Positions 7,811 through 44,930 are shown, counted from the first letter of the stretch. The stretch: 64,000 nt of DNA from Malacoraja senta (GCA_038087875.1 CM075982.1:23312001-23376000); one strand, 5' to 3'. Numbers and translations: made by a program. The notes: a model not told the origin generated them from the letters alone.

Positions 7811-9544
7811 TTCCAGGTACTGGAGATGTCTCTTTTGCAAAGAGGTGTCAAGTACCATGTTGTGTTGCATCACGATAAAAAGCTTACTGTGATGTATATT
7901 TAGAAGTTGGTGAGGGTTGTTGGGGACATGCCAAATTTCCTAAGTCTTCTACGAAAGTTGAGGCGTTAGTGTGCTTTTTTTGGCTACAGCTTCGATGTGG
8001 CTGCTTCAGGACACATTGCTGGTGATATTTATTCTTAAGAACTTGAGCTTCCAACCATCATGTGTCAATCATGTATCTACATGGAATCAATCTCTCCAGC
8101 AATTCAGGGAACAATTCTTCAGCCAGGGAGAAGACTTTTGCAATTAATTTGCCTGTGGCAGACAGCAGGGTGACCCCTCTAAATGTCTGGCAATTGGATT
8201 TGTCTTCTTTCTTGAAGATGATCACAAATATCATGTCTCTAAGATCACCTGATATGTCCCCCACATAAAAGATAAGACTTAATTTCGCCGTTGACAAGTT
8301 TTAGCAGGAATACCATCTACTCCTGAGACCTCCTTCTTTTTCAGTTGACACAAATTGAATTTCACTGTACCTTAATTGGTACTTGTGACAATAAACTGAC
8401 CTTGAAACCTTGAAGGCCATGTCAACCTCTTGTCAGGTTATTATGTTTCTTGTTAGAGACATACTAAACTACAGATGCAGGAATCTTGTGCAAAACACAA
8501 GGTGTCAGACGAACTCAATGGGTCAGGCAGCACCTGTGGAGGGAATGGACAGATAATGTTTCGGGTTGGGATCCTTCTTCAGATTGTTTTGAATTGGGGA
8601 GAAAGTGGAAAATAGGACCAATTGTAGTAGTGGGGAGAAAACTTGTCTGGGTCAGTGCTGATAGTAAAGGGAGTGAACATCAGGATGTTGAATAAGCTAC
8701 TTCTCTCCTGGATGGTGCTGAGTTTCTTAAGTGCGGATTCAGCTATACACCAAGCAAATGAACTGTATTCCATTACGCTGTGGAAATAGATGAGAGGAAT
8801 GAGAGAGATGGCTCGCACCCATAGTGTGGCATGTCACCAGAGCTTCTGCATCTGTTCAGTATGGTACATGCTGACATGGACAACTTCGTATTTTGAAGAG
8901 GTGCGTGGAACAGACCATCCTACAATCACCAGTCACCATCTTCATGTCTAAAGTTATGATGGTGTGAAGGCGATCAAAGACAGAGATGAAAATAGCTGTA
9001 CTCATTAACCTGTTTTGAGAAATGTATGCAGCAATGTCCTGTTGCCGATATGAAGGACATACAAAGATCACAAACTGCTTTCACAAAGTAAAAAGGCATC
9101 TTTCAAAAATGTCAAGATCCCTTGAAACCTCTTACATAATAGTAGCTCATGTGGTCTATGACATTGAGGATCAGTATGAAATCCTTTGAAGATTAATTCT
9201 CCCTTGAGGGTTTGTTGCATTCCTTATCATTGCTTTATCATGTTTAATTGCTCTGGAGGAGATTGGACATTAAACATTTTCCCACAGTGGGATAAAGGGG
9301 GACAACAGAGTTCAAGCTCCCTGGCGGAACTGAATAGGCACTTTTGAAGCACAATTTTACGATAACAAGTTTTAAAATGATAGCCTCTGGTGAAATCCCG
9401 AAAGTTCAGCGAGGTCCCAGACGCATCTTGTAGTCTGCATCCAGTCTGGAGATATCAGATGGAATTAGACCAGGAAACCTAGCTAGTTTTTGTTCTTCTG
9501 TTAGCATGATAAAAAAAATCTGACACTAAACGTTTCAAGTAACG

Positions 9545-20640: not shown

Positions 20641-22769
20641 CCTACCTAGCAAGTCTCGCAGGTTTTTTTTACAGATCTCCAATATTTTGATAATTAATAA
20701 ATCGGAGTTTTCAAAGAAAATGAAAACAATGGTAATTCTTCATTAATTTTTCTTCCTGGCTTTCCTGTAATCATATTCAAGAGACTAATCTTCAGCTCCT
20801 GGAGACCTCCACATGGAAAGTTAAAATGCACTGAAATTTGAAGTATAATTAGCAATCTTGCTGACTGCCTTACTAAAGTGGGATTCAGAAAAACAAAATT
20901 GTAATTTCATCCAAAGATTTTAAACGTTTTAACGGCTCAACTGTAATTATCAGTATGTGTGTTTAAATGAAGAAATGCCCAGAAGAATGATTTGAGAGGT
21001 TTATTATTCATTATCAACACTCAAGCTGTCCAGCTACACAAGAGGAAATAGTGTTATTAGCACAAAAAGGTTAAGAGGCAGTTTCCTGCAAAGGTCAGAG
21101 TAAAAATGATGGCTGCTAATGACTAGAAACATGAATTACAACCAAAAAGTGCTGACAGATGTTTCAGAGTCTCACCCCTTGGGCTGGAAAGAGAAAGGAG
21201 TCAATGGCAGATGTGAGAGAAAGAGTGATAGTGAATCACCATTAGTTTTTAACCATCAAAAGTAAATTGCAAATGAAAAAAAAAGTAAAGCAACACTCCA
21301 ACCCTCCCTGTTGCCAACATATCTCCCCCAAGTCCAAATATTAATTGCCCAGGAAGTTCAACATTACTTGTGGTCAAACAGTAACATGCTCCTCTCCTGA
21401 ACTTATCCAGGTACAATATAAGCACAGTCGTATCATATTTACCACACATAAAGTAGTCTATTCATGAGGTTCACCAATGGATAGCAGATTAAATATGTTC
21501 TAACATTTTATCTGTTTCATTTTCTATCTTTTTGCCATTCTCTGTTAATGTAATTCCACTATATCCATTCCTTTATAATTTTATTCATCTCCAACACTCT
21601 CTCACTTCCCATATACTCCAAAGCTGTCCTTACAACAAGGCAATTGTTTGGATAGGCGACATTGCGGGTTGGGACCTTCTTCAGACTGATTAGAGGGTCC
21701 GGAGCCTAAACATCATGTATCAAGTACTTCTACCGATGCTGCCTGACCCACTGAGCTACTCTAGCACTTTGTGTTTTGCTCTAGGCCCCAGCGTCAGCTG
21801 TTCCTTGTATCTATAGTTCGATTGTTGTTACCCTTCTCTCAACACTCTCTGTAATGTCAATATCACTTACCAAATGGAAGGAGAAGTAGCAAAATAATAT
21901 AACTAGAGTGGATAATGTAGTTAATTATCCAAGATATATTACAAAATTTGAGGAATCAAATTATGAGGAAGTAGGAGTTTTACAAGGTAATAAAACCTGT
22001 TTTGATAACTCAGGGCAAAAATATACCAGCATTAGGAGGATACTCTTTAGCATTCCCATGTCATCAGACTTGGGAATCTGGAGACCAGTATACTCTCCAG
22101 TCTTTCCACTGATGTCCTTAGCTGAGAGTTTGTGACCAGATTACCTTTAGCTAGAATCATCCTCTTGGAATGTACGCCTTCCTTCCATCAACATCCCTCC
22201 CAGTAAATCTCTGGCAAGTCCAAAGTGTACCAGGTTTGTTTTCCTGTTTCACCTCCAAATCCAAACACATTCCTGGGTGAGTGCTAATGATAATATAAAT
22301 ACAGTTTGTCCACAAGCCGTTCAAGGTCATGTATTTCTGTGCAATTCGTAAAATGAATCCAAGACCAAAATATTCCAGTTTCTCCAGATTAAAATGTAAA
22401 TTTATTAAGTGGCTAACTTGTAAAGGTGAAATATGCAAGAGGGAATCTAGCACAGAGCAGAGTGGAACCAACGAAAACAGGACTAAAAAGAACCTCAGAT
22501 TATTTATATATAAAGGTCTTGCATTTATGTGGTGCCTTTCATGAGCTTCCATAGTTCGGTCTCTTCCTCCAGATGGTATGCAATATTGAAGTTCCAGAGA
22601 GTGTTATAAAAAGGGAAGCAACTATATTAACTGCCCAGACTACTTGTCATAAAGACAGCTTTATTAAATGTGGGGAAATATGCACCATGGGATGTCTCAA
22701 AACATTTTACAACCAAGTAAATGCCAAATACTTCTCTACTCACTTTACACACATGAATATGTGGCTAAG

Positions 22770-23590
22770 CCCAGCTCCAATGCCATCTATAACACCATGG
22801 TTGCCAGCTGTATCACATATGGTGAAGAGTCAGTGTACAAGAGAGAGATAGAACAGCTGATTGAGTGGTGCCACAATAACAACTCTCGCTCAATGTCAAC
22901 AAGACCAAGAAACTAATTGAAAGGGGAATTTGGGAGACCACTTGCCAGTTTTCATTGGTGGGTCAATGGCGGAAAACATTTCAGATGACCTCTGCTTGGC
23001 CCAGTACATTAATGTAATCACAAAGGTGTGAAATTTCGCATGTCACCAAATACTATAACAAACTTCTACAGATAAACTGTAGAAAGAATCCTGACTGGTT
23101 GTATCATGGTCTGATTCATTCCAGCACAAGGGGCTGCAGAGAGTGGTGGGCTAAGTCTGGCTCATCATAGGCACAACCCTCCTTACCATCAAAAGCAGGT
23201 AAGACAGCATCTATTATTAAGGATCCTCATCATCTGGGCATGCCCTCTTCTCGTCACTACCATCGGGCAAGAGGTACGAAAACCTGAAATTCCACACCAC
23301 CAAGTTCAGGAACAGCTACTTTCCTAAAACCATCAGATTCTTAAACCAACCTACACAAGCCTATTCCTATCTCAGCAATGCAACACTATGGACAATCTCT
23401 TGCACTACCATAGACTTGTTTTTATTTGTATTTTGCAGTTACGTCTTGTTTATGCAGAGTCTTTATTTTTATTGTCTTACATTATTTACCGTGTGTTATT
23501 TAGGTCTTTGTGCCTGCCATGCTGCTGCTCATTGTACCTGTACCTCACCGTATTTGTACATATGACAATAAACTCAATATGACTTGACTT
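22770..23590 (+). mobile_element. Rex1/Babar LINE 3' part
   Basis: ITYGEESVYKREIEQLIEWCHNNN...NVNKTK, TNFYR*TVERILTGCIMV* and HPHHLGHALFSSLPSGKRY-like motifs. Tail tgacaataaa...gacttgactt. Confidence 0.8.
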
Positions 23591-33499: not shown

Positions 33500-34495
33500 C
33501 CGGAAGTGGCGGCGCTGTTAATCGGCTGCGGCTCGCCTGCAGTCCGTCTGTTTTTACTTTTTCTGTTGGGTTTTTTTGTCCTGTTTTGTTAAGTTTTAGT
33601 TTGTTGGGTTATGTTAGGGGGGGAGAAACATGTCCTCTGTCTCCTCCTTTGGGGGAATGCGACTTTTTCGTGTCGTATCCCCCTTCCCTGCCTCCGTCTG
33701 CGGTGAGGCCTAATGGCGGAGCTGGCCGCCTCCATCCTGCGACCGACCCCGAGGCTACGGAGGCAGAGCCAGCCAGGACTTACCAACGAGATGCTGGCCG
33801 TCTTCGGGGCTGAGGCAGCAGTGGCCCGACTTGCTGGTGCGGCGTCCTGGCTTTCGGCGGCGGCCTGGAGCTGATGCAGCGGGGTCCGGAGCGGAGACTG
33901 CGGGACCTGGAGCTGATACAGCGGGGTCCGGAGCGGAGACTGCGGGACCTGGAGCTGATACAGCGGGGTCCGGAGCGGAGACTGCGGGACCTGGAGCTGA
34001 TACAGCGGGGTCCGGAGCGGAGACTGCGGGACCTGGAGCTGGTGCGGCGGGGTCCGGAGCGGAGACTGCGGGACCTGGAGCTGATGCAGCGGGGTCCGGA
34101 GCGGAGACTGCGGGGCCTGGAGCTGGGGCGGTGGCCCGGAGCGGAGACTGCGGGACCCGGGGCTGATGCTGTGGTGGGCGCTCTCGGAGCGGAGACGGCG
34201 TTCCGGCTTTCGGCGGCGGCGACATCACCACGGAGGTCCGCTGGACTGGAGGGCGGCATCTTCGGCCTGGATCGATCGCCTCAGCGCAGAGAGAGAACAA
34301 GGAGGGAAGAGACGGAGACTAAGACTTTGCCTCCATCACAGTGAGGGTGTGCTTGGTGAACTCACTGTGGTGGATGTTTAATTTGTATTTATTGTATGTT
34401 TTGTTATTATTGGTTCTGTGTATGACTGCAGGCATCACAATTTCATTCAGACCGAAAGGTCTGAATGACAATAAAGGAAACTTGACTTGACTTGA
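33500..34495 (+). mobile_element. Unclassified GC-rich non-autonomous retroposon (copy A) with internal VNTR and Rex1/Babar-like tail
   Basis: Starts CCGGAAGTGGCGGCG, then a T-rich block, a G-run and a CpG-rich body. Hairpin at 34332-34374, 3' stem-loop at 34443-34468, AATAAA at 34470-34475, (CTTGA)3 tail. Confidence 0.75.
33864..34170 (+). repeat. 42-bp GC-rich minisatellite, about 7 units
   Basis: Unit CCTGGAGCTGAT(A/G)CAGCGGGGTCCGGAGCGGAGACTGCGGGA starts at 33864, 33906, 33948, 33990, 34032, 34074 and 34116 (last unit degenerate). Confidence 0.95.
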
Positions 34496-35732
34496 GGGGG
34501 AGGGAGGGGAGAGGAAGGAGGTGGTATTGTGATGGAGCAATCTGCTTTGTTGAGTCTCAGTTCATCCCATACCGATTGACATTGACGGATTTGTCATCTG
34601 GAGGAATAACTCAAGGTGGGTGAATAACTCTGACTTCTGTCATTACCAGAAGCCGATGCAAAGCAAGCCAAATAGGAGATATAATGCACGTTGTCCTACT
34701 GTACAGTCTCCGCCAGGGATGTATTGGTACTGTAGAAGTATAAGTTGACTACGTTTGGGATAAAGGCCTGTTATATCTTGTGAAGATTGTCTAAAATGCC
34801 ATTTAAGGTCATATAACCTGCTTATACTTCCCGAGTAGACTTTCAGATAAAATGACGTAAGTGAAGGCTGCAGACACTTATGGAACCATATGTATAGAAG
34901 AGTCACAAAGGGAGAAATTAGTCCTCAGTCTCATGGCGGATGCATGGCAGAGTGGCATTGAAGTCTACTTCTGATGTCAGAATGCAAGTACAACATGCAG
35001 ATGTGACAGTGACATATATTTAACAGGCGACCCAAGATTAAGTTCAACCACATCACCATCAGGACGGAGTGTTTGTTGGGACAATTTAGAGGCAACTTTA
35101 TTCTGTCTCGTGTTTTACCTACACTCGGGTGTTTACTGGGTCACATTATGTAAGCTGATCATGCTCTTGGAATATTGAAGAGGCCATATAAATAGGGACC
35201 TCACCCTGCATCAAACCTAAACTTTACCTGGAAAACAAAGACATTCCCATTAATAACCGTATAAAATAGAAAGAATGGCTGTACGTGGTGAATGGATTAA
35301 CTTGCAGAGGAAGTCTGGAGCCAATATCCTGAGCCTCCAAGGTATTACACAGAATGATGTGGACTTCTGAAAGTAAGTGGGGGAGATAATAGAAGAATTT
35401 GGAAAAATACATGTTAAATATTGAGATTAAGATACCAGAAAATGTTATACTCTATATTGGAAGTAATCTTCTAACTTTGGCAACTTAATATTGGTCCACA
35501 CAGATGCATAACACAGGATTAAATGTGCTTCAATAAATTGTATTTAACATCAAAAGCACAATAAAATGGCCACTTCCAGAATAAGCAAATGAAAAGGGAC
35601 TGCTTGAACCTTTTGTTGTATTTTCATCTGTATCCTCTTGTAATTTGCACATTCTGTTCCAATTTTGAATTACTATTCAATCACAGTTACAGCTGTTTCT
35701 GGTTCTTTGGTGCCTGCATTTACAGAGTAGCC

Positions 35733-35838
35733 CATGCAAATACTTTATACAAGGAAAAAACTAATGGGGGGGTGGGGGGAATACATTGACTTCATTAACT
35801 CAAGCAATGCTGTACAAAGGATGCAGTGCAGGCATGCT
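35733..35838 (-). promoter_or_regulatory. Candidate RBFOX-type intronic splicing enhancer downstream of the 45-nt exon
   Basis: On the transcribed (minus) strand there is GCATG at 35833-35837 and TGCATG at 35733-35738, both within 130 nt of the donor, in repeat-free intron. Confidence 0.5.
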
Positions 35839-35860
35839 GGGATTGTTTTTGGAAACTCAC

Positions 35861-35905
35861 CATGGAGCTTTTAGGGAAAAACATCCTGCCCCAAACAGGT
35901 AAGGT
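35861..35905 (-). CDS. BCAS3: BCAS3 45-nt frame-preserving cassette exon (phase 2/2)
   Basis: The minus strand reads ccccctcactgaag|A CCT TAC CTG TTT GGG GCA GGA TGT TTT TCC CTA AAA GCT CCA TG|gtgagt, giving PYLFGAGCFSLKAP(C). This matches the 15-aa segment PYLFGAGCFSIKAPC that I recall distinguishing long and short human BCAS3 isoforms. Confidence 0.93.
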
Positions 35906-38029
35906 CTTCAGTGAGGGGGGAAAGAGATACAAATATAGAATTAATCCATCAATAAAAAGAAAACACGGTCCAATTTGAAATAAAATGTTGTACACACGTT
36001 ATCATTTCACTGAGATTCAACAATTAGGGAAAGAAAATGCAAATACTTATTTAACAATAAGTCAAAAATTGGAAAAGGCCAGAAATGCACCTTTGCTTTG
36101 GATAACAAACTGGCACAGTTGGAAATCTATCATCAAATTTAGTAGATTCCTGACCGAGTCATTGAGAAATCTGCTCAGATAGTTTCTCTGCATCTGATAT
36201 GCGGTGGATTCTGTTTACACATCCCACTCCCACAGAATTACACAAGACCAACTTGAATCTTTTTAACAGTTAGATTCAACCCACTTTGTTATAACTAACA
36301 ACAAATGCCAACTGAAACAATCAACGGTCTTGGTTTCATATGCTTATAGATCTGTTAAGTATTTCCAGCATTTTCTCTCATGTCATTAAAATCTGATTTT
36401 TATCCATTTTTAAAACTGACAGTACAAACTGGATAGCGATTCATTTTGGACATGTGTTGTGGTGCACTGTAATCTAGGTATGTTACGAGGCAGCATGTAT
36501 CTGAGGCTGGGCCGATGCCGGAGGAGTTCATGTTTACAGAGTGACGCTCATGTTTATTTGCCCTGGGTCTCAGATGAGTGGAACAACTGCATAAATGGAG
36601 TTGATCTCCTGTATACAAATGTGATGTTTATGGAACACAATTTTATGTTATGTGTGCTGTAAACCTGGATTTGTTCCATTTGAAATGCTGTTCAACCATT
36701 TTTGTCTTCAACATCTAGCAATTTTACACATCTTCATTCCCAAGAAGGACAAGGTGTTAGGACATTTCTTGAAATGGCACCATTGATCTTTATTCAATTA
36801 ACAAAGGGGCCAAAGGATTGGATTAATCAGTTTTATCAGTTCATTTCCCTCACTTCCACCCCAACTAGGAAGCCACCATAAATTACCCACTGTTTACTTG
36901 GGGGAGGGGGGGGGGGGGAGAGTGGAGGGGCAGGTAGTGGTTGTACAAACAAACTTCTACTACAGAATTTAACTGTAGCGCAGATACATCAAGTAACTTG
37001 AAGGCATTTTTGTATTTTAATTGTTCTCACCACAGTGTTCTAGATTTAAGAAAGCTTGCATCAAGGTAGGTTGGAGGGCAAATGTTAACATGTGCAATAC
37101 TACAGTATTCTGCAACTCCTGAGAGCTGGGATCTTTAGCATGCTATCACTGAAGACTACGGTGAAGACATTATTCCTGCTACTGGAGAGTATCTTGGAAG
37201 CATTTCATCTACACTACAGCCTCAAAAGGTTATGCTACATCTAATTTAGTTTTTAGTTCAGAAATACAACATGGAAACAGGCCCTTCGGCCCACTGAGTC
37301 CACGCTGACCATTGATCACCTATTCACACTAGTTATATGTTATCCCACTTTCTCATTCACTCCCTACACACCAAGGGCAATTTACAGAGGCCAGTTAACC
37401 TACAAACCCATACGTTGAAGCTCGAGGAGGAATCCCACATGGTCAAGAGGAGAACATGCAAACTCCACACATACAACACCCCAGGTCAGGATCGAACACG
37501 GGTCTCTGGCATCGTGAGGCAGCAGCTTCACCAGCTGTGCCAATGTGCTGCCAAAAAGCTGTTCTTTCAAGGCACACTGTTTTCTTAAGCTAGGTTATCT
37601 GAAATCAATTTCAAAAATCAACATCAGCCATCAGAGTTTGGGCAAATGAGTCAATATATTAAAAACATCCTTTGAATGTATTCATTTTTCTCTCTTTGAA
37701 AGACTTTCATTTGAAAACACCATAAAGAATCCAGAAGGCAATAGATATTAGCTGCAACATACGATGATGAATTATGCAAGCATCAGTAACAATGGGAGAT
37801 GGGAGACTAGGCTATCCTTTGAAACTACCTCCTGTAATGAAATGCTTGGATGGAATGAGATGCTAGAATCCACTGCGTTATTTCTCAGGATCTTGCCCAT
37901 TTCATTGGCAAAAGATCTTTCAAGCCATTGGAAAATTGTTAGTAAATGCTTTGTTGAAGAAGATTGTGTTACACAAAATCACCAGATTTTATAAGTAAAT
38001 TTCATTTCTGAATTTAGTCTGTCTCAATG

Positions 38030-38632
38030 CCATTAAGTCAGTGTGCAAGAATAATCAAAGGTAAACTTAATTCTGATGCAGTAGTACACCAATAGAATTA
38101 AATAATGGCTGTTGGTTCAAAAATAAGACACATAATCAAGTAACATTATGCCTTTGTGTGTACATCATAACGTAAAAATCACCCTAAAATAATTCCTAAA
38201 CAGGTTTTGAATCTTAGCCTCATTTTAGCATTATAAACTGTTCAAGATTTCTTATTGCATCTTATAACTTAAATGAGAGACTTTCATTCAATAACCAATG
38301 TTTCCCCATTATCTATTTAATTAAAATGTGATAATTTAAGCCCATTGGTGAAGAGATTGAATCATTGATCTTAACAAAGCTTTGCATTTATATAATTATT
38401 GGGCAAAGTATGCAGTCAAACCCAAATTCATGACATCAAAGTGTTACCATTTCAGGATATTTTCTTTTTTGTCTCCTCTGACAGCTAATTAGTCCTCTCC
38501 CATCAGAAGCATTTGCCTCTGTTTGCCTCCGGCATGGTTTAATGGATTAATAATTACATCAAGCCTCTTTATATTTCCACTGGGTTGATAATAATGGCAT
38601 TGCCATTACCGATAAATATTTTGCCATCATAA
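38030..38632. promoter_or_regulatory. Candidate conserved non-coding enhancer
   Basis: Repeat-free AT-rich block with TCF/LEF-type ATCAAAG (38054-38060; ACATCAAAG 38433-38441), TGACAG (38479-38484), palindromic CTAATTAG (38485-38492) and many TAAT/ATTA. Conservation not tested. Confidence 0.4.
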
Positions 38633-39195
38633 AGGGCCTGTCCCACTTGGGCGGCCTAATCTGCGAGTTCTAGCGAGTTTGCCCTCGACTCATACTCGCA
38701 GCATGGTTGACACGAGGTCGTAGGAGGTCTTTGTAACTCTCCTTCATGCTCGAGAGTGGTCTCCGCGTACTGGAGGCCTCAGCTAGGTCGCGGCGTTTAT
38801 TTCAATATGATAAAAAATGCCCGCGAGTAAAAAAAGGTCACCATGGAAAAAAATCGATACTTTTTTTACTCGAAGGTATAGTCGTAGTTGGTCATAGTCA
38901 GTTGGCATGTTAGTCGTAGGTAATCGAGGTTAGTCGAAGGTAGTTGTAGATAGTCTTCATCATAGTCGAAGGGAGGTCAAAGGGAGGTTGAAGAAGATCG
39001 AAGGAGATCGTCTTCACTCTCCACTATTCGGTGTCCAATTTTCCTGAAGTTAGACGTAGCTAGTCGAAGCTGGTCTTCAATATAATCGAAGGAGGTCGAA
39101 GGAGGTCTTCTACATAGTCGAAGGAGGTTTTCAACATGTCATTTTTTCAAACTCTTCTAAACTCGCCAATTAGGTCGCCCAAGTGGGACAGCCCC
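38633..39195. mobile_element. PIF/Harbinger-like MITE (last TIR base and right TSD displaced to 42093-42096 by a CR1 insertion)
   Basis: TAA + AGGGCCTGTCCCACTTGGGCGGCCTAAT at the left end and ATTAGGTCGCCCAAGTGGGACAGCCCC at the right. Internal tagtcg/gtcgaagga repeats. Confidence 0.8.
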
Positions 39196-42092
39196 GACAA
39201 TAGACAATAAGTGCAGGAGTAGGCCATTCGGCCCTTCGAGCCAGCACCGCCATTCAATGTGATCATGGCTGATCATCTCCAATCAGTACCCCGTTCCTGC
39301 CTTCTCCCCATATCCCCTATCTTTAAGAGCCCTATCTAGCTCTCTCTTGAAAGTATCCAGAGAACCGGCCTCCACCGCCCTCTGAGGCAGAGAATTCCAC
39401 CGACTCACAACTCTCTGTGAGAAAAAGTGTTTCCTCGTCTCCGTTCTAAATGGCTTACCCCTTATTCTTAAACTGTGGCCCCTGGTTCTGGACTCCCCCA
39501 ACATCGGGAACATGTTTCCTGCCTCTAGTGTGTCCAAACCCTTAACAATCTAATATGTTTCAATAAGATTCCCTCTCATCCTTCTAAACTCCACAGTGTA
39601 CAAGCCCAGCCGCTCCATTCTCTCAGCATATGAGAGTCCCGCCATCCCGGGAATTAACCTTGTAAACCTACGCTGCACTCCCTCAATAGCAAGAATGTCC
39701 TTCCTCAAATTAGGGGACCAAAACTGCACACAATGGTGTGGTCTCACTAGGGCCCTGTACAACTGCAGAAGGACCTATTTGCTCCTATACTCAACTCCTC
39801 TTGTTATAAAGGCCAACATGCCATTCGCTTTCTTCACGGCCTGCTGTACCTGCATGCTTACTTTCATAGACTGATGAACAAGGACCCCCAGATCCATTGT
39901 ACTTCCCCTTTTCCCAACTTGACGCCATTTAGATAGTAATCTGCCTTCCAGTTTTTGATATCAAAGTGGATAACCTCACATTTATCCATATTAAACTTCA
40001 TCTGCCATGCATCTGCCCACTCCCCCAACCTGTCCAAGTCACCCTGCATTCTCATAGCATCCTCCTCACAGTTCACACTGCCACCCAGCTTTGTGTCATC
40101 TGCAAATTTGCTAATGTTACTTTGAATCCCTTCATCCAAATCATTGATGTACATTGTAAATAGCTGCAGTCCCAGCACCGAGCCTTGCGATACCCCACTA
40201 GTCACTGCCTGCCATTCTGAAAGGGACCCGTTAATCCCTACTCTTTGTTTCCTGTCTGCCAACCAATTTTCTATCCATGTCGGCACTCTACCCCCAATAC
40301 CATGTGCCCTAATTTTGCACACTAATCACCTCTGTGGGACCTTATCAAATGCTTTCTGAAAATCTAGGTACACTACTTCCTCTTTTATAATTGACTCCAG
40401 CATCTTCCCCACCACCGATGTCAGGCTAACTGGTGTATAATTCCGTTTTCTCTCTCCCGCCTTTCTTAAAAAGTGGGATAACATTAGCTATCCTCCAATC
40501 CACAGGAACAGATCCTGAGTCTATAGAACATTGGAAAATTATCACCAATGCATCCACGATTTCTAGAGCCACTTCCTTAAGTACCTGGGATGCAGACCAT
40601 CAGGCCCTGGGGATTTATCAGCCTTCAGTCCCATCAGTCTACCCAACACCATTTCCTGCCTAATGTGGATTTCCTTCAGTTCCTCCGTCACCCCAGGTCC
40701 CCTGGCCACTACTATATCAGGAAGATTGTTTGTGTCCTCCTTAGTGAAGACGGATCCAGAGTAACTGTTCAACTCATCTGCCATCTCCTTGTTCCCCACA
40801 ATAAATTCACCTTTTTCGGTCTTCAAGGGTCCAACTTTGGTCTTAACTATTTTTTCCTCTTCACATACCTAAAGAAACTTTTACTATCCACCTTTATATT
40901 CTTGGCTAGCTTACCTTCATACCTCATCTTTTCTCCCCATATTGTCTTGTTTATTTTGTTATTTTTTAGTTTGTTAAAAGTTTTGTTTTAATGTTCTTCG
41001 GTTTGTTTTATGTGGGGGGAGGGGGGAGGGGGGAGGGGATTGGGGGAAACTTTTTTTCAGGTTCTTACCTTCGTGGAGATGTGATCAATTTTCGGATCAC
41101 ATTCGGCTTTGCGGCCCACCATCGATGGAGCTGGAAGCCTCCTTGGACTGACTTTGAGCCTTATCGCGGGGCGCGGACTTAACATCGGAGCTGATCCCTT
41201 GCCTGGGATCGCGACCACCGCGGAATCAACGTCAAAGGCTCGCAGTCTCGGGTGAGGCTAGTCGGGAGCTCCAACGTCATGGAACATTCACCAGCCCTGA
41301 CGCGAGGTTTGATCGTCCAGCGCGGGGGAGCTGACATCCCCCCGATGCAGGAGCAGATCGTCTCGACGCGGAGGGCCCGAACGCCGCCGGCTATGGGAAT
41401 TAAGATCATCCCGTCAATGGGGGCTCGAGGCCCACGACCGAGGAAGAACTAAGGGGAAGGACTTGAACTTTATTTCGCCTTCCATCACAGTGAGGAATGT
41501 GTAAGAGTCACTGTGGTGGATGTTCATGTTAAAATGTGTTTTTGAAGTGATCTGTTACTTTTTATTGTATGACTGACCTGGCTAATGAAATTCCCCGTAT
41601 GTTGCAAAACATACTTGGCGAATAAAGTGTGATTCTGATTCTGATCTGATTCTGTTGCTCTTTAAAAATTACCCATCCTCTTGCTTCCCGCTCATCTTTG
41701 CTGCGTTGTACTTCTCTTTCCACGATCGCCCCTTACTCCCCTTGGAATCTTTCTTCCTCCTAGGAATGAACTGATCCTGCACCTTCTGTATTATTCCTAG
41801 AAATACCTGCCATTGTTGTTCCACTGTCATCCCTGCTAGGGTATCTTTCCAGTCAACTTTGGCCAGCTCCTCCCTCATGGCCCCATAGTCCCCTTTATTC
41901 AACTGTATCACTGACACCTCCGATCTACCCTTCTGCCTCTCCAATTGTAGATTAAACCTGACCATATTATGGTCACTACCTCCTAATGGCTCATTAATCT
42001 CAAGTTCCTGTATCAAATCCGGTTCATTACATTACACTAAATCCAGAATTGCCTTCTCCCTGGTAGGCTCCAATACAAGCTGCTCTAAGAAT
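39196..42092 (-). mobile_element. Young 5'-truncated CR1 LINE (end of APE domain, RT, 3' UTR), interrupted at about 40950-41654
   Basis: ORFs 41669..42016 (EPLGGSDHNMVRF), 40563..40826 (KSPGPDGLHPR), 39864..40322 (VSQGSVLG, YINDLD, KFADDTKLGG), 39550..39762 and 39283..39537. (GACAATA)n tail at 39196. Confidence 0.95.
40950..41654 (+). mobile_element. Unclassified GC-rich non-autonomous retroposon (copy B), related to copy A
   Basis: T-rich block, G-run, gaaac, ggagctgg..gcctcc and a CpG-rich body. Same hairpin as copy A at 41481-41520, stem-loop at 41597-41614, AATAAA at 41621-41626, (GATTCT)n tail. Confidence 0.75.
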
Positions 42093-43799
42093 TTAATTGC
42101 AGCAAATACCAAAGCAGGGTCGGTCCACCCATGACACATTTTCAGCACTTTCTTCGTCATCGTGACTGTATTAACATTTTCCTGACATGGGTCATTGAAC
42201 CATATTTATATATTTTCTGGACTCAATTTACATTTTTACCATTTGTTGATTGATTTGGCCAGAGGCAAGTTTCTATACATGAATCATAATATTCCTTTTA
42301 ACCTTTTCGCATGTTGTAAAGAATCCATAGATTTTTTTTCTGACTGATTTGAAAACAAGCTGGCAACTAAGTCTTAAAAGCTATTTCAGGTCATGATTTA
42401 AACTATCATCATGTAAGTTTATGTTGAATGTATATTTTTTACATTACAGTGTTTAACTCAGCAAGACCAAGATCAAATGGCTTTCATTATTTGAGTTTTC
42501 TTCATTTATAGTTTGAATTCCCAAAAAATTCTTGCTCATGTATTTGCTTATTGATTGAATTATAAGACTGCGCTTGCTGGTTCACCATTTTGTCACAATC
42601 TCCTCTCATGGTTCTAAATCATCCCTGAAACATCTCTCCTACAACTCCAAAGATTCCATAATTTCTCCAGTTGTCCTCAAGCAGTTGATCTCCTTTGCCC
42701 TCGTGCTCTGAATCTAAATACAGTTCCCTCCACACTGCTGCAGCATTCAAAAAGCTTGCATTTTTCTGAGCTAATCTCAGCGTCCAATTGAACTAAAATT
42801 GTTTAATGAATAGTCGATTCTGCGAGTGAATGCCGACAATATTCCAGATGTGATCCCACTGGTGCCAAACAGTTTTGTGCCTACATATCCTTCCCTTAAA
42901 CCATTTACAAAAATTCAGCATCAATGCTAATTATGAACATATTGGGATCATTTAAAGTAATATGGAGTGCAGAAATATCTTTAAACACTACTTTTCAAGT
43001 GCAGTTACATCAATGATTGAGACTTCAGGCTGCTCAGACACCTCTTATTAGTCAGAGTAATCTGCAATTAGTGAGTTAAGCAGCTGGACCCACAGTGTCT
43101 TGATCCCCTCGAGCAGTCCCTCAAAGCCATTGGCCACACAGGTGTAATTACATCTGTTTGATTCACCTGGGACCGACTGTCTTTGCATCTGCTGAAGACA
43201 CACTCCATGTTTGTTGCCTCCAGGCCTCCAGCCATTAGTACCAAAGCATTTGTTCTATACCCAGTGCATCATATATAACATTGAGCCAGATGGTCATTGT
43301 CCATGACTGCAATTATTTCGTGCTGTGATATATTGATGGAGGGGAGTGACAGGCTAAACTATATGTATTCAGAATGTATGCAACAAGGCTGATTTTTTTA
43401 CACATGAAACAGGTGAAGGAAATAGAATAGGTTCAATTTCTTGCATCAGTCTTTGTCATTCATACTATAAACATCATCTAAATTTTAATTTACCATCTCA
43501 TCATCACAGTTCAGGGCTGATGTAAAAAAATTCACACTGACTAGGTTCAATCATGCGGCTCCTTTCTCATATAATCAATGGCTGAATGTCCTTTTTGATA
43601 TAAAATTGTCTCACTGGTGCCAAACACACTTTTGTGTATGCATTTCTTTTCCTGAAACCAATAAAAGTCACATCTACTTTACATTCGTCAGAGACTGGCT
43701 GACAACTAAAATTCTTACCCATGTACTGCTACATATTGCCGTTTATTATCTAGCCCCATGCTAATTCATTTAAACAGAGACACAAGGAGCCGCTGAGGT

Positions 43800-44930
43800 T
43801 TATTATTATTATTATTATTAAATTGTTGAAAACATTAGCGATGCAGTGGTGCTGGTTTCTGACGGGCACGGTGACGGACGCGCCACACATCTCTGTCCTC
43901 CATGCAGCTGGCAAGCTCCTCTTTTGTCTCTACACATGCGTCTTCCATCAACGTCTTCAGCATCGCCTTGATTGGCCGTCCCGGGACACGTCTTCCATGG
44001 GTGGGTTCCCACAGCACGACCTTGTTTGCTGGCATTTCTGGCTGGCGGTGGCAGTGACCAGCGAGCCTCATCCATCTCGACCTGATCTTCTCGGTCAGCG
44101 GTTGAATCTCCCCATAGAGCTGGGCGTTGGTAATGTGGTCCCTCCAACTGGACATTTTGAACTTTTCTGAGCATTCGGGTGTAGGTACCATCGAGAGACT
44201 TGGACAGTGCTCGAGTGAGAGTCCATGCCTCACACCCGTACAATAATATGGTCTCTGCAGTTGCATGGAAGAATCTCAGTTTGAGACCCTAAAGGCTCTG
44301 TCCCACGGGTTTGTGGTCGTTGGCGGGGAAGCGTGGCGTCGCCGGAAGAGGGGACCGCACGGCAACCACGAGAGCGCCGCACGGATGCTGCGCGGGGGGC
44401 CAAGTACGGCCGGTTCCACGAGCTTGCGGTTTCGGCTGATGACGTCTTTCGGATCGCGGGGCTGTGGTGGCGGCCGTGCCGCACACGTACCTCACTGGTG
44501 GCGGCTGTGGCAGCGGCCGTGCCTCACTGGTGGCGGCTGTGGCGGCGGCCGTGCACCACTGGCGGCGGCTGTGGCGGCGGCCGTGCCGCACACGTGCCTC
44601 ACTGGCGGAGGCTGTGGCGGTGCAGGTTCGCCTCACGGCGCTCGTGCCTCACTGGCGGCGGCTGTGGCGGTGACCGTGCCGCACTTGTGCCTCACTGGCG
44701 GCGGCTGTGCGGTAGGAACATATTTTTGGACAGTGTTGGGTTTTTTTTAGCACCGTGCGGTGTTGGGAACAACGGCGCACGGCCCCGGCACTGTGCGTTT
44801 GACCGAGTCCGCGGTCTCTGGCGGCCCAGGAGCGGTAGATAGTTCCTGTTTCGCCGCCAATGACCGCAGACTCGTGAGACAGGCCTTTTAGACATCCGAG
44901 ACATCCAGATTTTCCCCATGTAATTGAGGG
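43800..44930 (-). mobile_element. RTE-type LINE 3' fragment with (TAA)n tail, interrupted by a MITE
   Basis: The reconstructed frame reads ALNYMGKIWMSRMS|KGLKLRFFHATAETILLYGCEAWTLTRALSKSLDGTYTRMLRKVQNV/SWRDHITNAQLYG...RLAGHCHRQPEMPANKVVLWEPTHGRRVPGRP...DRDVWR. (TTA)n at 43800-43820. Confidence 0.9.
44293..44887. mobile_element. GC-rich PIF/Harbinger-like MITE with about 40-bp imperfect TIRs and internal tandem repeats
   Basis: Left end TAA|AGGCTCTGTCCCACGGGTTTGTGGTCGTTGGCGG; right end CCGCCAATGACCGCAGACTCGTGAGACAGGCCTT|TTA. Internal gtgcctcactggcggcggctgtggcgg repeats at about 44455-44710. Confidence 0.8.

What the first reader, a model, noticed from the sequence alone, without database searches (positions are those of the whole stretch)
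33500..41654. Two members of an unclassified, SVA-like structured retroposon family
Seen: the inserts at 33500-34495 (A) and 40950-41654 (B) share one layout. Both run T-rich block, ttatgt + G-run + gaaac, ggagctgg..gcctcc, a CpG-rich centre that does not align between them (a 42-bp VNTR in A), an identical hairpin, a 3' stem-loop, AATAAA and a short-repeat tail. Neither has tRNA A/B boxes or coding capacity. A begins with CCGGAAGTGGCGGCG, an ETS/GABP-type site. Its tail frame (AATTTCA-stem-loop-TGACAATAAA-(CTTGA)n) matches the Rex1/Babar tails in this window (about 8357-8413 and 23530-23590). Inference: a non-autonomous, possibly Pol II-driven family with a hypervariable GC core, mobilised by Rex1/Babar-type LINEs and architecturally convergent with primate SVA. 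I do not recognise it as a named family, but it may already be in a repeat library.
Basis: partly seen in the sequence, partly recalled or inferred. Interest (0 to 1): 0.78.

Follow-up and report, generated by a model that had tools for sequence, protein, structure and literature searches.

The report
ORF-less skate retroposons with Rex1-type tails
Two 0.7-1.0 kb non-coding inserts in a skate-like genome are diverged copies of one mobile-element family that carries no gene of its own, ends like a Rex1-type jumping gene and probably borrows that element's enzyme to copy itself; interesting to transposon specialists, but its copy number, promoter and catalogue status could not be checked here.

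Summary
A (33500-34495) and B (about 40954-41654) share, in the same order, a T-rich block, TTATGT + G-run + GAAAC, a GGAGCTGG..GCCTCC box, a CpG-rich centre, a hairpin with identical arms, a terminal stem-loop, AATAAA and a short-repeat tail.

New here:
- A second hairpin in the 5' part covaries between A and B.
- The two cores are built on the same GGAGCTG seed.
- B is a clean insertion. An uninterrupted paralogue of its host CR1 LINE gives the empty site, with no target duplication and TTCTG microhomology with the tail.
- No LINE protein remnant, Pfam domain, tRNA, Rfam family or A/B box is present.
- T-runs rule out Pol III read-through.

A's tail motif recurs on a Rex1-like LINE 3' end in the window.

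Best reading (0.7): a non-autonomous, stringent-type retroposon family that uses Rex1-type LINE enzymes.

Pol II transcription and the ETS start are untested. The likeness to SVA is analogy only. Whether the 5' part comes from a Rex1 5' UTR could not be tested, because no skate genome was searchable. Comparison with Dfam/Repbase was not possible.

The scan has noted this same kind of family on other DNA of this genome at least 12 times. None of those notes was followed up.

The parts
33500..33550 (+). A: CpG-rich leader starting with CCGGAAGTGG (ETS-like word). Whether it belongs to the element is probable but not proven.
   Evidence: CpG o/e is 1.17 here against 0.22 in the 200 nt upstream. 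The ETS word is single in the window, with 0.67 expected. B has no counterpart.
33551..33629 (+). A: T-rich block, then TTATGT (33609-33614), G7 run (33617-33623), AGAAAC (33624-33629).
   Evidence: T runs of 4 to 7. Aligns to B from 33584 onward.
33651..33683 (+). A: hairpin 1 (5' hairpin), loop UUUUUCGU.
   Evidence: -21.2 kcal/mol, z -6.0. 11 consensus pairs with B, 4 of them changed on both sides.
33718..33733 (+). A: GGAGCTGG..GCCTCC box, preceded by an ATG (33713).
33734..34295 (+). A: CpG-rich variable core with the 42-bp VNTR (33864-34169), each unit carrying GGAGCTG.
   Evidence: For 33640-34300, GC is 0.69 and CpG o/e 0.88, against 0.36 for the window. GGAGCTG counts.
34296..34378 (+). 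A: purine-rich lead-in and hairpin 2 (stem 34332-34345 / 34361-34374).
34379..34495 (+). A: T-rich spacer with TGTATGACTG (34419-34428), AATTTCA (34439-34445), terminal stem-loop (34443-34468), AATAAA (34470-34475), (CTTGA)3 (34481-34495).
40954..41050 (+). B: T-rich block, TTATGT (41008-41013), G-runs including (GGGGGGA)3.6 (41014-41046), GAAAC (41046-41050). The 5' junction lies at 40954-40957.
   Evidence: Empty-site paralogue L001.
41073..41107 (+). B: hairpin 1, loop AAUUUUCG.
   Evidence: -14.1 kcal/mol, z -2.8. Covariation with A.
41127..41142 (+). B: GGAGCTGG..GCCTCC box, with an ATG at 41125.
41143..41444 (+). B: CpG-rich core, a decayed 60-77-bp repeat whose units start with GGAGCTG/GGAGCTC (41127, 41187, 41264, 41327) and end CGCGG.
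   Evidence: For 41050-41450, CpG o/e is 1.07. GGAGC occurs 5 times, reached by none of 5000 shuffles. Unit alignment. TRF finds no array.
41445..41524 (+). B: purine-rich lead-in and hairpin 2.
41525..41654 (+). B: spacer with TGTATGACTG (41566-41575), AAATTCC (41588-41594), terminal stem-loop (41590-41623), AATAAA (41621-41626), (TGATTC)n (41630-41654). The last TTCTG is shared with the target.
22638..23590 (+). Degenerate Rex1-like LINE 3' end whose tail (TGACAATAAA..CTTGACTT) matches A's tail. It shows the type of the candidate partner LINE.
   Evidence: tblastn hits by 73 proteins of the Rex1-like set. C-terminal LPSGKRY..FPKTIRFLN. Tail alignment to A, z 5.3.
8357..8413 (+). Short insert fragment with the same tail frame (AATTTCA, stem-loop, TGACAATAAA, CTTGA-like repeats).
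39200..42300 (-). CR1-type LINE copy that hosts B (context, not part of the family).
   Evidence: RVT_1 in ORF 39864-40322. Best relatives are CR1-like RTs of Callorhinchus, turtles and birds. Uninterrupted paralogue in L001.

Best explanation
A and B are two diverged members (about 62-64% identity in the alignable modules, cores unalignable) of a non-autonomous, ORF-less retroposon family of a skate-like genome.

Each is a reverse-transcribed copy of a 0.7-1.0 kb non-coding RNA. The last 60 nt or so of that RNA imitate the 3' end of Rex1-type LINEs: AATTYC, a stem-loop, AATAAA(G), then a few short tandem repeats.

In LINEs of the 'stringent' type, this 3' stem-loop plus repeat is what the LINE reverse transcriptase recognises. 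The repeat then anneals to the nicked target to prime cDNA synthesis. So the family most likely uses Rex1-type enzymes supplied in trans.

The body carries two conserved RNA hairpins. One covaries and the other has invariant arms. It also carries a CpG-rich minisatellite built on a GGAGCTG seed that expands, contracts and decays independently in each lineage.

The many T-runs exclude Pol III read-through. The RNA must therefore come from Pol II, either from a promoter of its own in the CpG-rich 5' part or core, or from flanking promoters.

Shown here: discrete insertion (B), tail sharing with a Rex1-like LINE end (A), absence of coding capacity and of Pol III features, and the structures.

Inferred: use of Rex1 enzymes, Pol II transcription, and any function of the two hairpins.
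For: - Collinear modules are confirmed. Their similarity exceeds shuffles: z 5.4 for the 5' module and z 10.8 for the 3' module.
- The hairpin-2 arms are exact in both copies and unique in the window.
- Hairpin 1 keeps its fold through 4 double changes while its UUUUCG loop is kept.
- B interrupts a CR1 copy exactly where the paralogue in L001 is continuous, and its microsatellite abuts the target with TTCTG microhomology.
- The motif TGACAATAAA..CTTGA is shared by A, by a Rex1-like LINE 3' end (22638-23590) and by a short fragment at 8357-8413. Three matches were found against 0 expected.
- B's tail frame equals that of a Rex1-like LINE end in L002.
- Rex1 is described as having a conserved 3' UTR followed by oligonucleotide repeats (PMC6274825), and as most abundant in rays (PMC13343379).
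- Stringent 3'-end recognition through a stem-loop and repeats is established for such LINE/SINE pairs (PMC3747384).
- None of 281 CR1-like and Rex1-like proteins hits A or B by tblastn at E 1e-3.
- No Pfam, Rfam or tRNA match.
- T runs of 4-7 lie near the 5' end of both copies.
- Core CpG o/e is 0.88 and 1.07, against 0.34-0.37 in B's host CR1 and 0.36 in the window. Each copy is therefore far younger than the A/B split, or is protected from methylation.
- At least 12 first-reader notes from other windows of this genome describe the same kind of element. These are unchecked leads.
Against: - Only two copies could be examined. Covariance models of both conserved modules find nothing else in the window or in 49 kb of related contigs.
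- All searches outside the window were blank. Copy number therefore rests on unchecked notes.
- No target duplication flanks either copy.
- A's 5' end has no empty site.
- The partner LINE's clade was not formally tested.
- B's tail has no LINE counterpart in the window.
- Pairwise similarity of the post-hairpin region to LINE 3' UTRs is weak: z 3.6 at best apart from the A tail.
- Nothing shows transcription.
Confidence: 0.7

Rival explanations
1. Internally deleted Rex1-type LINEs. The 5' part (T-rich block, G-run, hairpin 1, box with ATG, repeat array) would be a Rex1 5' UTR and start of ORF, joined to the complete Rex1 3' UTR (hairpin 2 to tail). These would then be ordinary deletion derivatives rather than a family with a body of its own.
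For: - Rex1 lacks ORF1, and some ORF1-less CR1-group elements carry species-specific repeat arrays near the 5' UTR (PMC13343379).
- LINE 5' UTRs are often CpG-rich.
- The conserved box holds an ATG in both copies.
- The layout hairpin, T-rich spacer, stem-loop, AATAAA, repeats resembles the 3' UTRs of the Rex1-like ends at 23340-23590, in L001 and in L002.
- B's spacer aligns to the window's Rex1 3' UTR with z 3.6.
Against: - No residue of endonuclease or RT coding sequence is present.
- The ORFs after the ATG are not conserved: 53 codons in A against 8 in B.
- Hairpin 2 is absent from all three Rex1-like 3' UTRs available.
- The family is reported with several different tails (unchecked), which fits a body that swaps tails better than it fits many independent deletions.
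Confidence: 0.2
2. LINE-mediated retrocopies of a host non-coding Pol II gene family (processed pseudogenes of a lncRNA), not a self-propagating family.
For: No Pol III features, an AATAAA signal, CpG-island-like composition and an ETS-like word at A's start.
Against: - Stringent-type LINEs need their own 3' end on the template (PMC3747384). Both copies carry a LINE-type stem-loop and microsatellite rather than poly(A).
- A and B have different tails on a shared body.
- Many similar elements are noted elsewhere in the genome.
Confidence: 0.05
3. Solo LTRs, or 3' ends of an LTR retroelement. The T-rich block plus G-run would be a U-box and polypurine tract, and the rest U3-R.
For: A purine or G run preceded by T-rich sequence, a repeat-rich GC core and AATAAA near the end.
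Against: - B has no 4-6 bp target duplication, and its end is a microsatellite in microhomology with the target.
- There are no TG..CA termini.
- A's tail equals a LINE tail.
- There is no U5 after the AATAAA.
Confidence: 0.02

Closest known systems
SVA (and LAVA/PVA/FVA) composite retrotransposons of hominoids
   Same: Non-autonomous, non-coding and about 1 kb or more. A simple repeat near the 5' end, a GC-rich VNTR in the middle and an AATAAA near the 3' end. Mobilised in trans by a LINE and not transcribed by Pol III.
   Different: There is no CCCTCT hexamer array, no Alu-like part, no HERV-K SINE-R and no poly(A) tail. No target duplication is seen. The presumed partner is a stringent-type Rex1-like LINE, not L1. 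The 3' end copies the LINE's own tail. A clear VNTR exists only in A. There is no shared ancestry, so the likeness is one of layout only.
Stringent-type SINE/LINE pairs (e.g. eel UnaSINE1/UnaL2; elasmobranch HE1 SINE/HER1 LINE, from my own knowledge and PMC3747384)
   Same: The 3' end is copied from a partner LINE: a stem-loop followed by short tandem repeats. The repeat is used at the target junction.
   Different: Those SINEs have a tRNA-type Pol III head and measure 100-400 bp. These elements have no Pol III head and many T-runs, measure 0.7-1.0 kb and carry a CpG-rich minisatellite.
CORE-SINE / V-SINE / other 'highly conserved domain' SINE superfamilies (PMC5499810 for cartilaginous fish)
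   Same: A conserved internal domain combined with different LINE-derived tails in different subfamilies.
   Different: The conserved parts here are two RNA hairpins that match no Rfam family. The head is not tRNA-derived. No sequence comparison with Deu, V or CORE domains was possible here.
Rex1/Babar LINEs
   Same: The tail architecture: a conserved 3' UTR followed by oligonucleotide repeats (PMC6274825). A's tail motif is shared with a Rex1-like copy in the window.
   Different: No endonuclease or RT coding sequence is present in A or B.

Membership tests
SVA-type composite retrotransposon | 5' (CCCTCT)n hexamer array | tested here: not met
   The 5' part is a T-rich block plus G-runs. B has (GGGGGGA)3.6. 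This is an analogue only.
SVA-type composite retrotransposon | Alu-like region and HERV-K-derived SINE-R | tested here: not met
   No 7SL/Alu or any other Rfam match. No retroviral protein remnant in Pfam.
SVA-type composite retrotransposon | GC-rich central VNTR | tested here: met
   A has 42 bp x 7.3 copies. B has only a decayed GGAGCTG-led repeat.
SVA-type composite retrotransposon | poly(A) tail and L1-type target duplication | tested here: not met
   The tails are (CTTGA)3 and (TGATTC)n. There is no TSD.
SINE (Pol III retroposon) | tRNA, 5S or 7SL-derived head with internal A and B boxes | tested here: not met
   ARAGORN finds none. Rfam finds none. No A box on either strand and no strict or sense-strand B box; only three loose B-box-like matches on the minus strand.
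SINE (Pol III retroposon) | body free of Pol III terminators (T4 or longer) | tested here: not met
   7 runs in A and 9 runs in B of T4-T7 on the element strand.
Stringent-type LINE-dependent non-autonomous retroposon | 3' end shared with a LINE of the same genome | tested here: met
   A: TGACAATAAA..CTTGA also ends the Rex1-like copy at 22638-23590. B has the same frame as the Rex1-like end in L002, but no partner in the window.
Stringent-type LINE-dependent non-autonomous retroposon | discrete insertion with the tail at the target junction | tested here: met
   B is set against the uninterrupted paralogue L001. A was not testable, because its flanks are unique.
Stringent-type LINE-dependent non-autonomous retroposon | no coding capacity | tested here: met
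Stringent-type LINE-dependent non-autonomous retroposon | many dispersed copies | tested here: inconclusive
   Two copies in the window and none in 49 kb of related contigs. No skate genome was searchable. At least 12 unchecked notes from other windows.
Rex1/Babar LINE (autonomous or 5'-truncated copy) | endonuclease/RT ORF2 sequence upstream of the 3' UTR | tested here: not met
   No tblastn hit of 281 LINE proteins in A or B.
Rex1/Babar clade for the partner LINE | RT phylogeny placing it with reference Rex1 | not testable with these tools
   No named Rex1 reference was at hand. The relatives found are unnamed teleost proteins. The label rests on the tail type and the C-terminal motif.
LTR / solo LTR | TG..CA termini and a 4-6 bp target duplication | tested here: not met

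The most novel reading that the evidence does not exclude
Skates carry a long-lived superfamily of Pol II-transcribed, CpG-island-bearing composite retroposons. It would be defined by two conserved RNA hairpins, a new kind of 'core domain', and would repeatedly exchange Rex1- or L2-type tails to change its LINE partner. It would thus be a non-primate counterpart of SVA that scatters unmethylated CpG islands and minisatellites, and possibly promoters, through the genome.
Probability: 0.3. Interest if true: 0.65.

Novelty: new variant of a known kind. Interest (0 to 1): 0.5.

Why it matters
LINE-dependent parasites without a Pol III head are well studied only in primates (SVA and its relatives). 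A structured, tail-swapping family of this sort in a cartilaginous fish would show that the design arises repeatedly. It would offer a natural experiment on what a stringent LINE enzyme needs from its template: the terminal stem-loop and repeat, and perhaps the internal hairpins. It would also be a dispersed source of CpG islands and minisatellites in genes such as BCAS3. For annotation, it would explain a class of 'unknown' GC-rich repeats in skate assemblies.

Tried and rejected
- Exact hairpin pattern in viral, metagenome and prokaryote genome contigs: nothing.
- A-type tail pattern in metagenome and genome contigs: nothing.
- Protein word searches with two A ORFs: no relatives.
- Exact look-ups of four A/B ORFs: not on record.
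- The public collections hold little skate DNA, so these blanks say nothing about copy number.
- I fetched contigs through CR1 RT relatives. This gave 49 kb (L001-L006), of which 33.6 kb (L001, L003-L006) come from the skate-like sample. There was no family copy, but there was the empty site for B.
- The big protein search with a Rex1-like fragment from L002 returned mostly unnamed proteins, teleost where a name was given, and no skate full-length Rex1. A 3.1-kb Rex1-like contig of unknown origin (L007) was uninformative.
- TSD search: only chance repeats away from the junctions.
- Reading the elements on the minus strand, where the T-rich end becomes an A-rich tail: rejected. The plus-strand tail matches LINE tails in ORF-to-tail orientation, and no TSD exists.
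- Solo-LTR reading: rejected on the junctions.
- HDV-like or other ribozyme at the 5' end, as in other retroposons of this genome: no Rfam support.
- None of the fetched contigs looked human.


Full report
**What is there**

The window is from a skate-like cartilaginous fish. Earlier notes say so, and the LINE content fits. Two plus-strand inserts are involved: A (33500-34495) and B (about 40954-41654).

- a T-rich block;
- TTATGT + G-run + GAAAC;
- a GGAGCTGG..GCCTCC box;
- a CpG-rich centre;
- a hairpin whose two arms are letter-for-letter identical in A and B;
- a T-rich spacer holding TGTATGACTG;
- AATTYC, a terminal stem-loop, AATAAA and a short tandem repeat.

Further checks:
- The 42-bp VNTR of A is real (33864-34169, 7.3 copies, 93% matches).
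- The hairpin arms occur nowhere else in the window.
- The hairpins and terminal stem-loops fold much better than shuffles.

**Is it more than chance?**

- BLAST alone sees only the hairpin (E 4e-4) and a 22-nt T-rich word. Local alignments of single blocks are weak.
- End-free global alignment against 500 dinucleotide shuffles is clearer. The stretch from the end of the G-run to the box scores z 5.4 (0 of 500 shuffles reach it). The stretch from hairpin to tail scores z 3.8. The whole 3' module scores z 10.8.
- The T-rich block alone and the cores are not significant.
- Identity over aligned columns is 62-64%.
- A and B are therefore truly related, but distantly. They belong to different subfamilies.

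**New observations**

1. A second hairpin lies in the 5' part (A 33651-33683, -21.2 kcal/mol, z -6.0; B 41073-41107, -14.1, z -2.8). Its UUUUCG loop is kept. Of its 11 consensus pairs, 4 are changed on both sides and still pair. With two sequences this is anecdotal, but it fits selection on an RNA fold.
2. The cores do not align, yet both are built on one seed. Of the 13 plus-strand GGAGCTG words in the window, 8 lie in A (the box and every VNTR unit) and 3 in B. GGAGC occurs 5 times in B's core, and none of 5000 shuffles reaches that count. B's core reads as a decayed 60-77-bp repeat whose units start GGAGCTG and end CGCGG. The centre is thus a minisatellite in both copies, evolving independently.
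3. The box is preceded by an ATG in both copies, but the reading frames behind it are not conserved.
4. The cores have CpG o/e of 0.88 and 1.07. The window as a whole has 0.36, and the CR1 copy that hosts B has 0.34-0.37. Each copy is therefore either much younger than the split between A and B, or it is kept unmethylated.

**Boundaries**

B sits inside a minus-strand CR1-type LINE (RVT_1 in ORF 39864-40322; CR1-like relatives). An ENA contig from a sample that holds skate-like host DNA (L001) carries an uninterrupted paralogue, 91-94% identical across the site.
- The host sequence is continuous from window 40956 to 41650.
- B is therefore an insertion of 693-701 bp.
- There is no target duplication, and at most a 3-nt target loss.
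- The last TTCTG of its (TGATTC)n tail is shared with the target. This is what target-primed reverse transcription with a microsatellite tail produces.

B's first base aligns to A's 33584. So B is either 5'-truncated by about 84 nt, or A's first 84 nt are extra. However, A's flanks are unique, so there is no empty site for it.

The ETS-like word occurs once in the window, against 0.67 expected. It is a lead, not evidence.

**What it is not**

- There are no tRNA genes, no Rfam family even at E 10, no A box and no sense-strand B box (only three loose minus-strand matches), and no Pfam domain above its cut-off.
- None of 281 CR1-like and Rex1-like proteins hits A or B by tblastn at E 1e-3. The same set marks eleven separate LINE fragments elsewhere in the window.
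- Runs of T4-T7 on the element strand (7 in A, 9 in B) would stop Pol III.
- The junctions exclude an LTR.

**The tails**

- The motif TGACAATAAA..CTTGA occurs three times in the window against 0 expected: in A, at 8386 and at 23563.
- The copy at 23563 ends a degenerate LINE (22638-23590). Its C-terminal motif, and tblastn hits by 73 proteins of the Rex1-like set, mark it as the Rex1-like type. Its tail aligns to A's with z 5.3.
- B's tail type is unique in the window. Its frame (AATTCC, stem-loop, GAATAAAG, repeats) equals that of a Rex1-like LINE end in contig L002 (AATTTCC, CCCC/GGGG stem, GAATAAAG, (TATC)n).
- Rex1 is described as having a conserved 3' UTR followed by oligonucleotide repeats (PMC6274825), as lacking ORF1, and as most abundant in rays (PMC13343379).
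- LINEs of this sort recognise their own 3' stem-loop and repeats, and SINE-like parasites copy that tail (PMC3747384).
- I could not place the partner LINE in the Rex1 clade by phylogeny, because no named references were at hand.

**Most likely mechanism (confidence 0.7)**

This is a non-autonomous family whose RNA is made by Pol II. It is recognised through its Rex1-type terminal stem-loop and repeat by a Rex1-type ORF2 protein acting in trans, and it is inserted by target-primed reverse transcription.
- Shown: B's insertion, the tail sharing, the absence of coding capacity and of Pol III features, and the folds.
- Inferred: the enzyme source, the polymerase, any promoter, and the role of the two internal hairpins.

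By my reading of the 45-nt BCAS3 exon (35861-35905, minus strand, AG..GTGAGT), both copies lie antisense to BCAS3.

**Main rival (0.2)**

A and B could be internally deleted Rex1 elements, with a 5' UTR plus repeat array joined to the 3' UTR.
- For it: 5' repeat arrays are reported in ORF1-less CR1-group elements (PMC13343379), there is an ATG in the box, and the 3' module has a LINE-like layout.
- Against it: no coding remnant is present, hairpin 2 is absent from the three Rex1-like 3' UTRs I could read, and several tail types are reported on one body.
- It could not be tested properly, because no full-length skate Rex1 could be fetched.

**Copy number**

I could not search a skate genome.
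- All external routes were blank or too thin.
- Covariance models of both modules find only A and B in the window, and nothing in 49 kb of fetched contigs (33.6 kb of them from the skate-like sample).
- The scan's own index holds at least 12 first-reader notes from other windows of this genome that describe GC-rich, ORF-less retroposons with a covarying hairpin and interchangeable Rex1- or L2-type tails. One of them mentions a repeated AACATCG motif, which B's core also carries.
- None of those notes was followed up. They are leads, not evidence, but they make a low-copy oddity unlikely.

**Comparison and verdict**

The family works like a stringent-type SINE, in that it copies a LINE tail. 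It looks like SVA, in that it has a simple repeat, a structured non-coding part, a GC-rich VNTR and an AATAAA. It fails the defining tests of both.

I rate it a new variant of a known kind, with one caveat: an uncurated consensus may already sit in Dfam or Repbase. Interest is moderate (0.5). It is a tidy and probably undescribed design. Its promoter, partner and abundance remain to be shown.

Noticed in passing
window 44266-44900: A further CpG-rich block (GC 0.665, CpG o/e 1.06) with a 32/43/93-bp VNTR at 44465-44713. It abuts a minus-strand LINE RT fragment (43818-44266). It has no BLAST similarity to A or B and may be another GC-rich VNTR element.
   Followed up: partly
window 35861-35905: The 45-nt BCAS3 cassette exon noted by another reader reads on the minus strand (AG before it, GTGAGT after it, GCATG motifs downstream on that strand). 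A and B are therefore antisense to BCAS3.
   Followed up: partly
window 39063-39137: The CR1-type LINE that hosts B ends, on the minus strand, in 22/32-bp tandem units. This is a different tail type from those of A and B.
   Followed up: no
L002:9825-11045 and L002:14135-15230: An ENA contig (ERZ21784934) whose Rex1-like LINE is closest to teleost proteins (81% to Scortum barcoo). It also holds a CR1 piece 78.5% identical in DNA to the window's CR1. The contig's host is unknown, so this could be a conserved family or a horizontal transfer of the kind reported between rays and teleosts.
   Followed up: no
protein P0001: A CR1 RT fragment 76% identical to the window's copy is filed as a hypothetical protein of Aeromonas cavernicola on a 709-bp contig. 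This is most likely fish-host contamination of a bacterial assembly.
   Followed up: no
L001:632-1666 (minus strand): The skate-like contig L001 also carries a 344-aa RT ORF of a non-LINE type (YLDD motif), flanked by ORFs without Pfam hits. It may be a DIRS-like or LTR-type element.
   Followed up: no
window 34337-34343 and 34363-34369 (also 41486-41492, 41509-41515): The arms of hairpin 2 contain CACAGTG and its complement CACTGTG, the heptamer of V(D)J recombination signals. No nonamer was looked for, and this is most likely coincidence.
   Followed up: no
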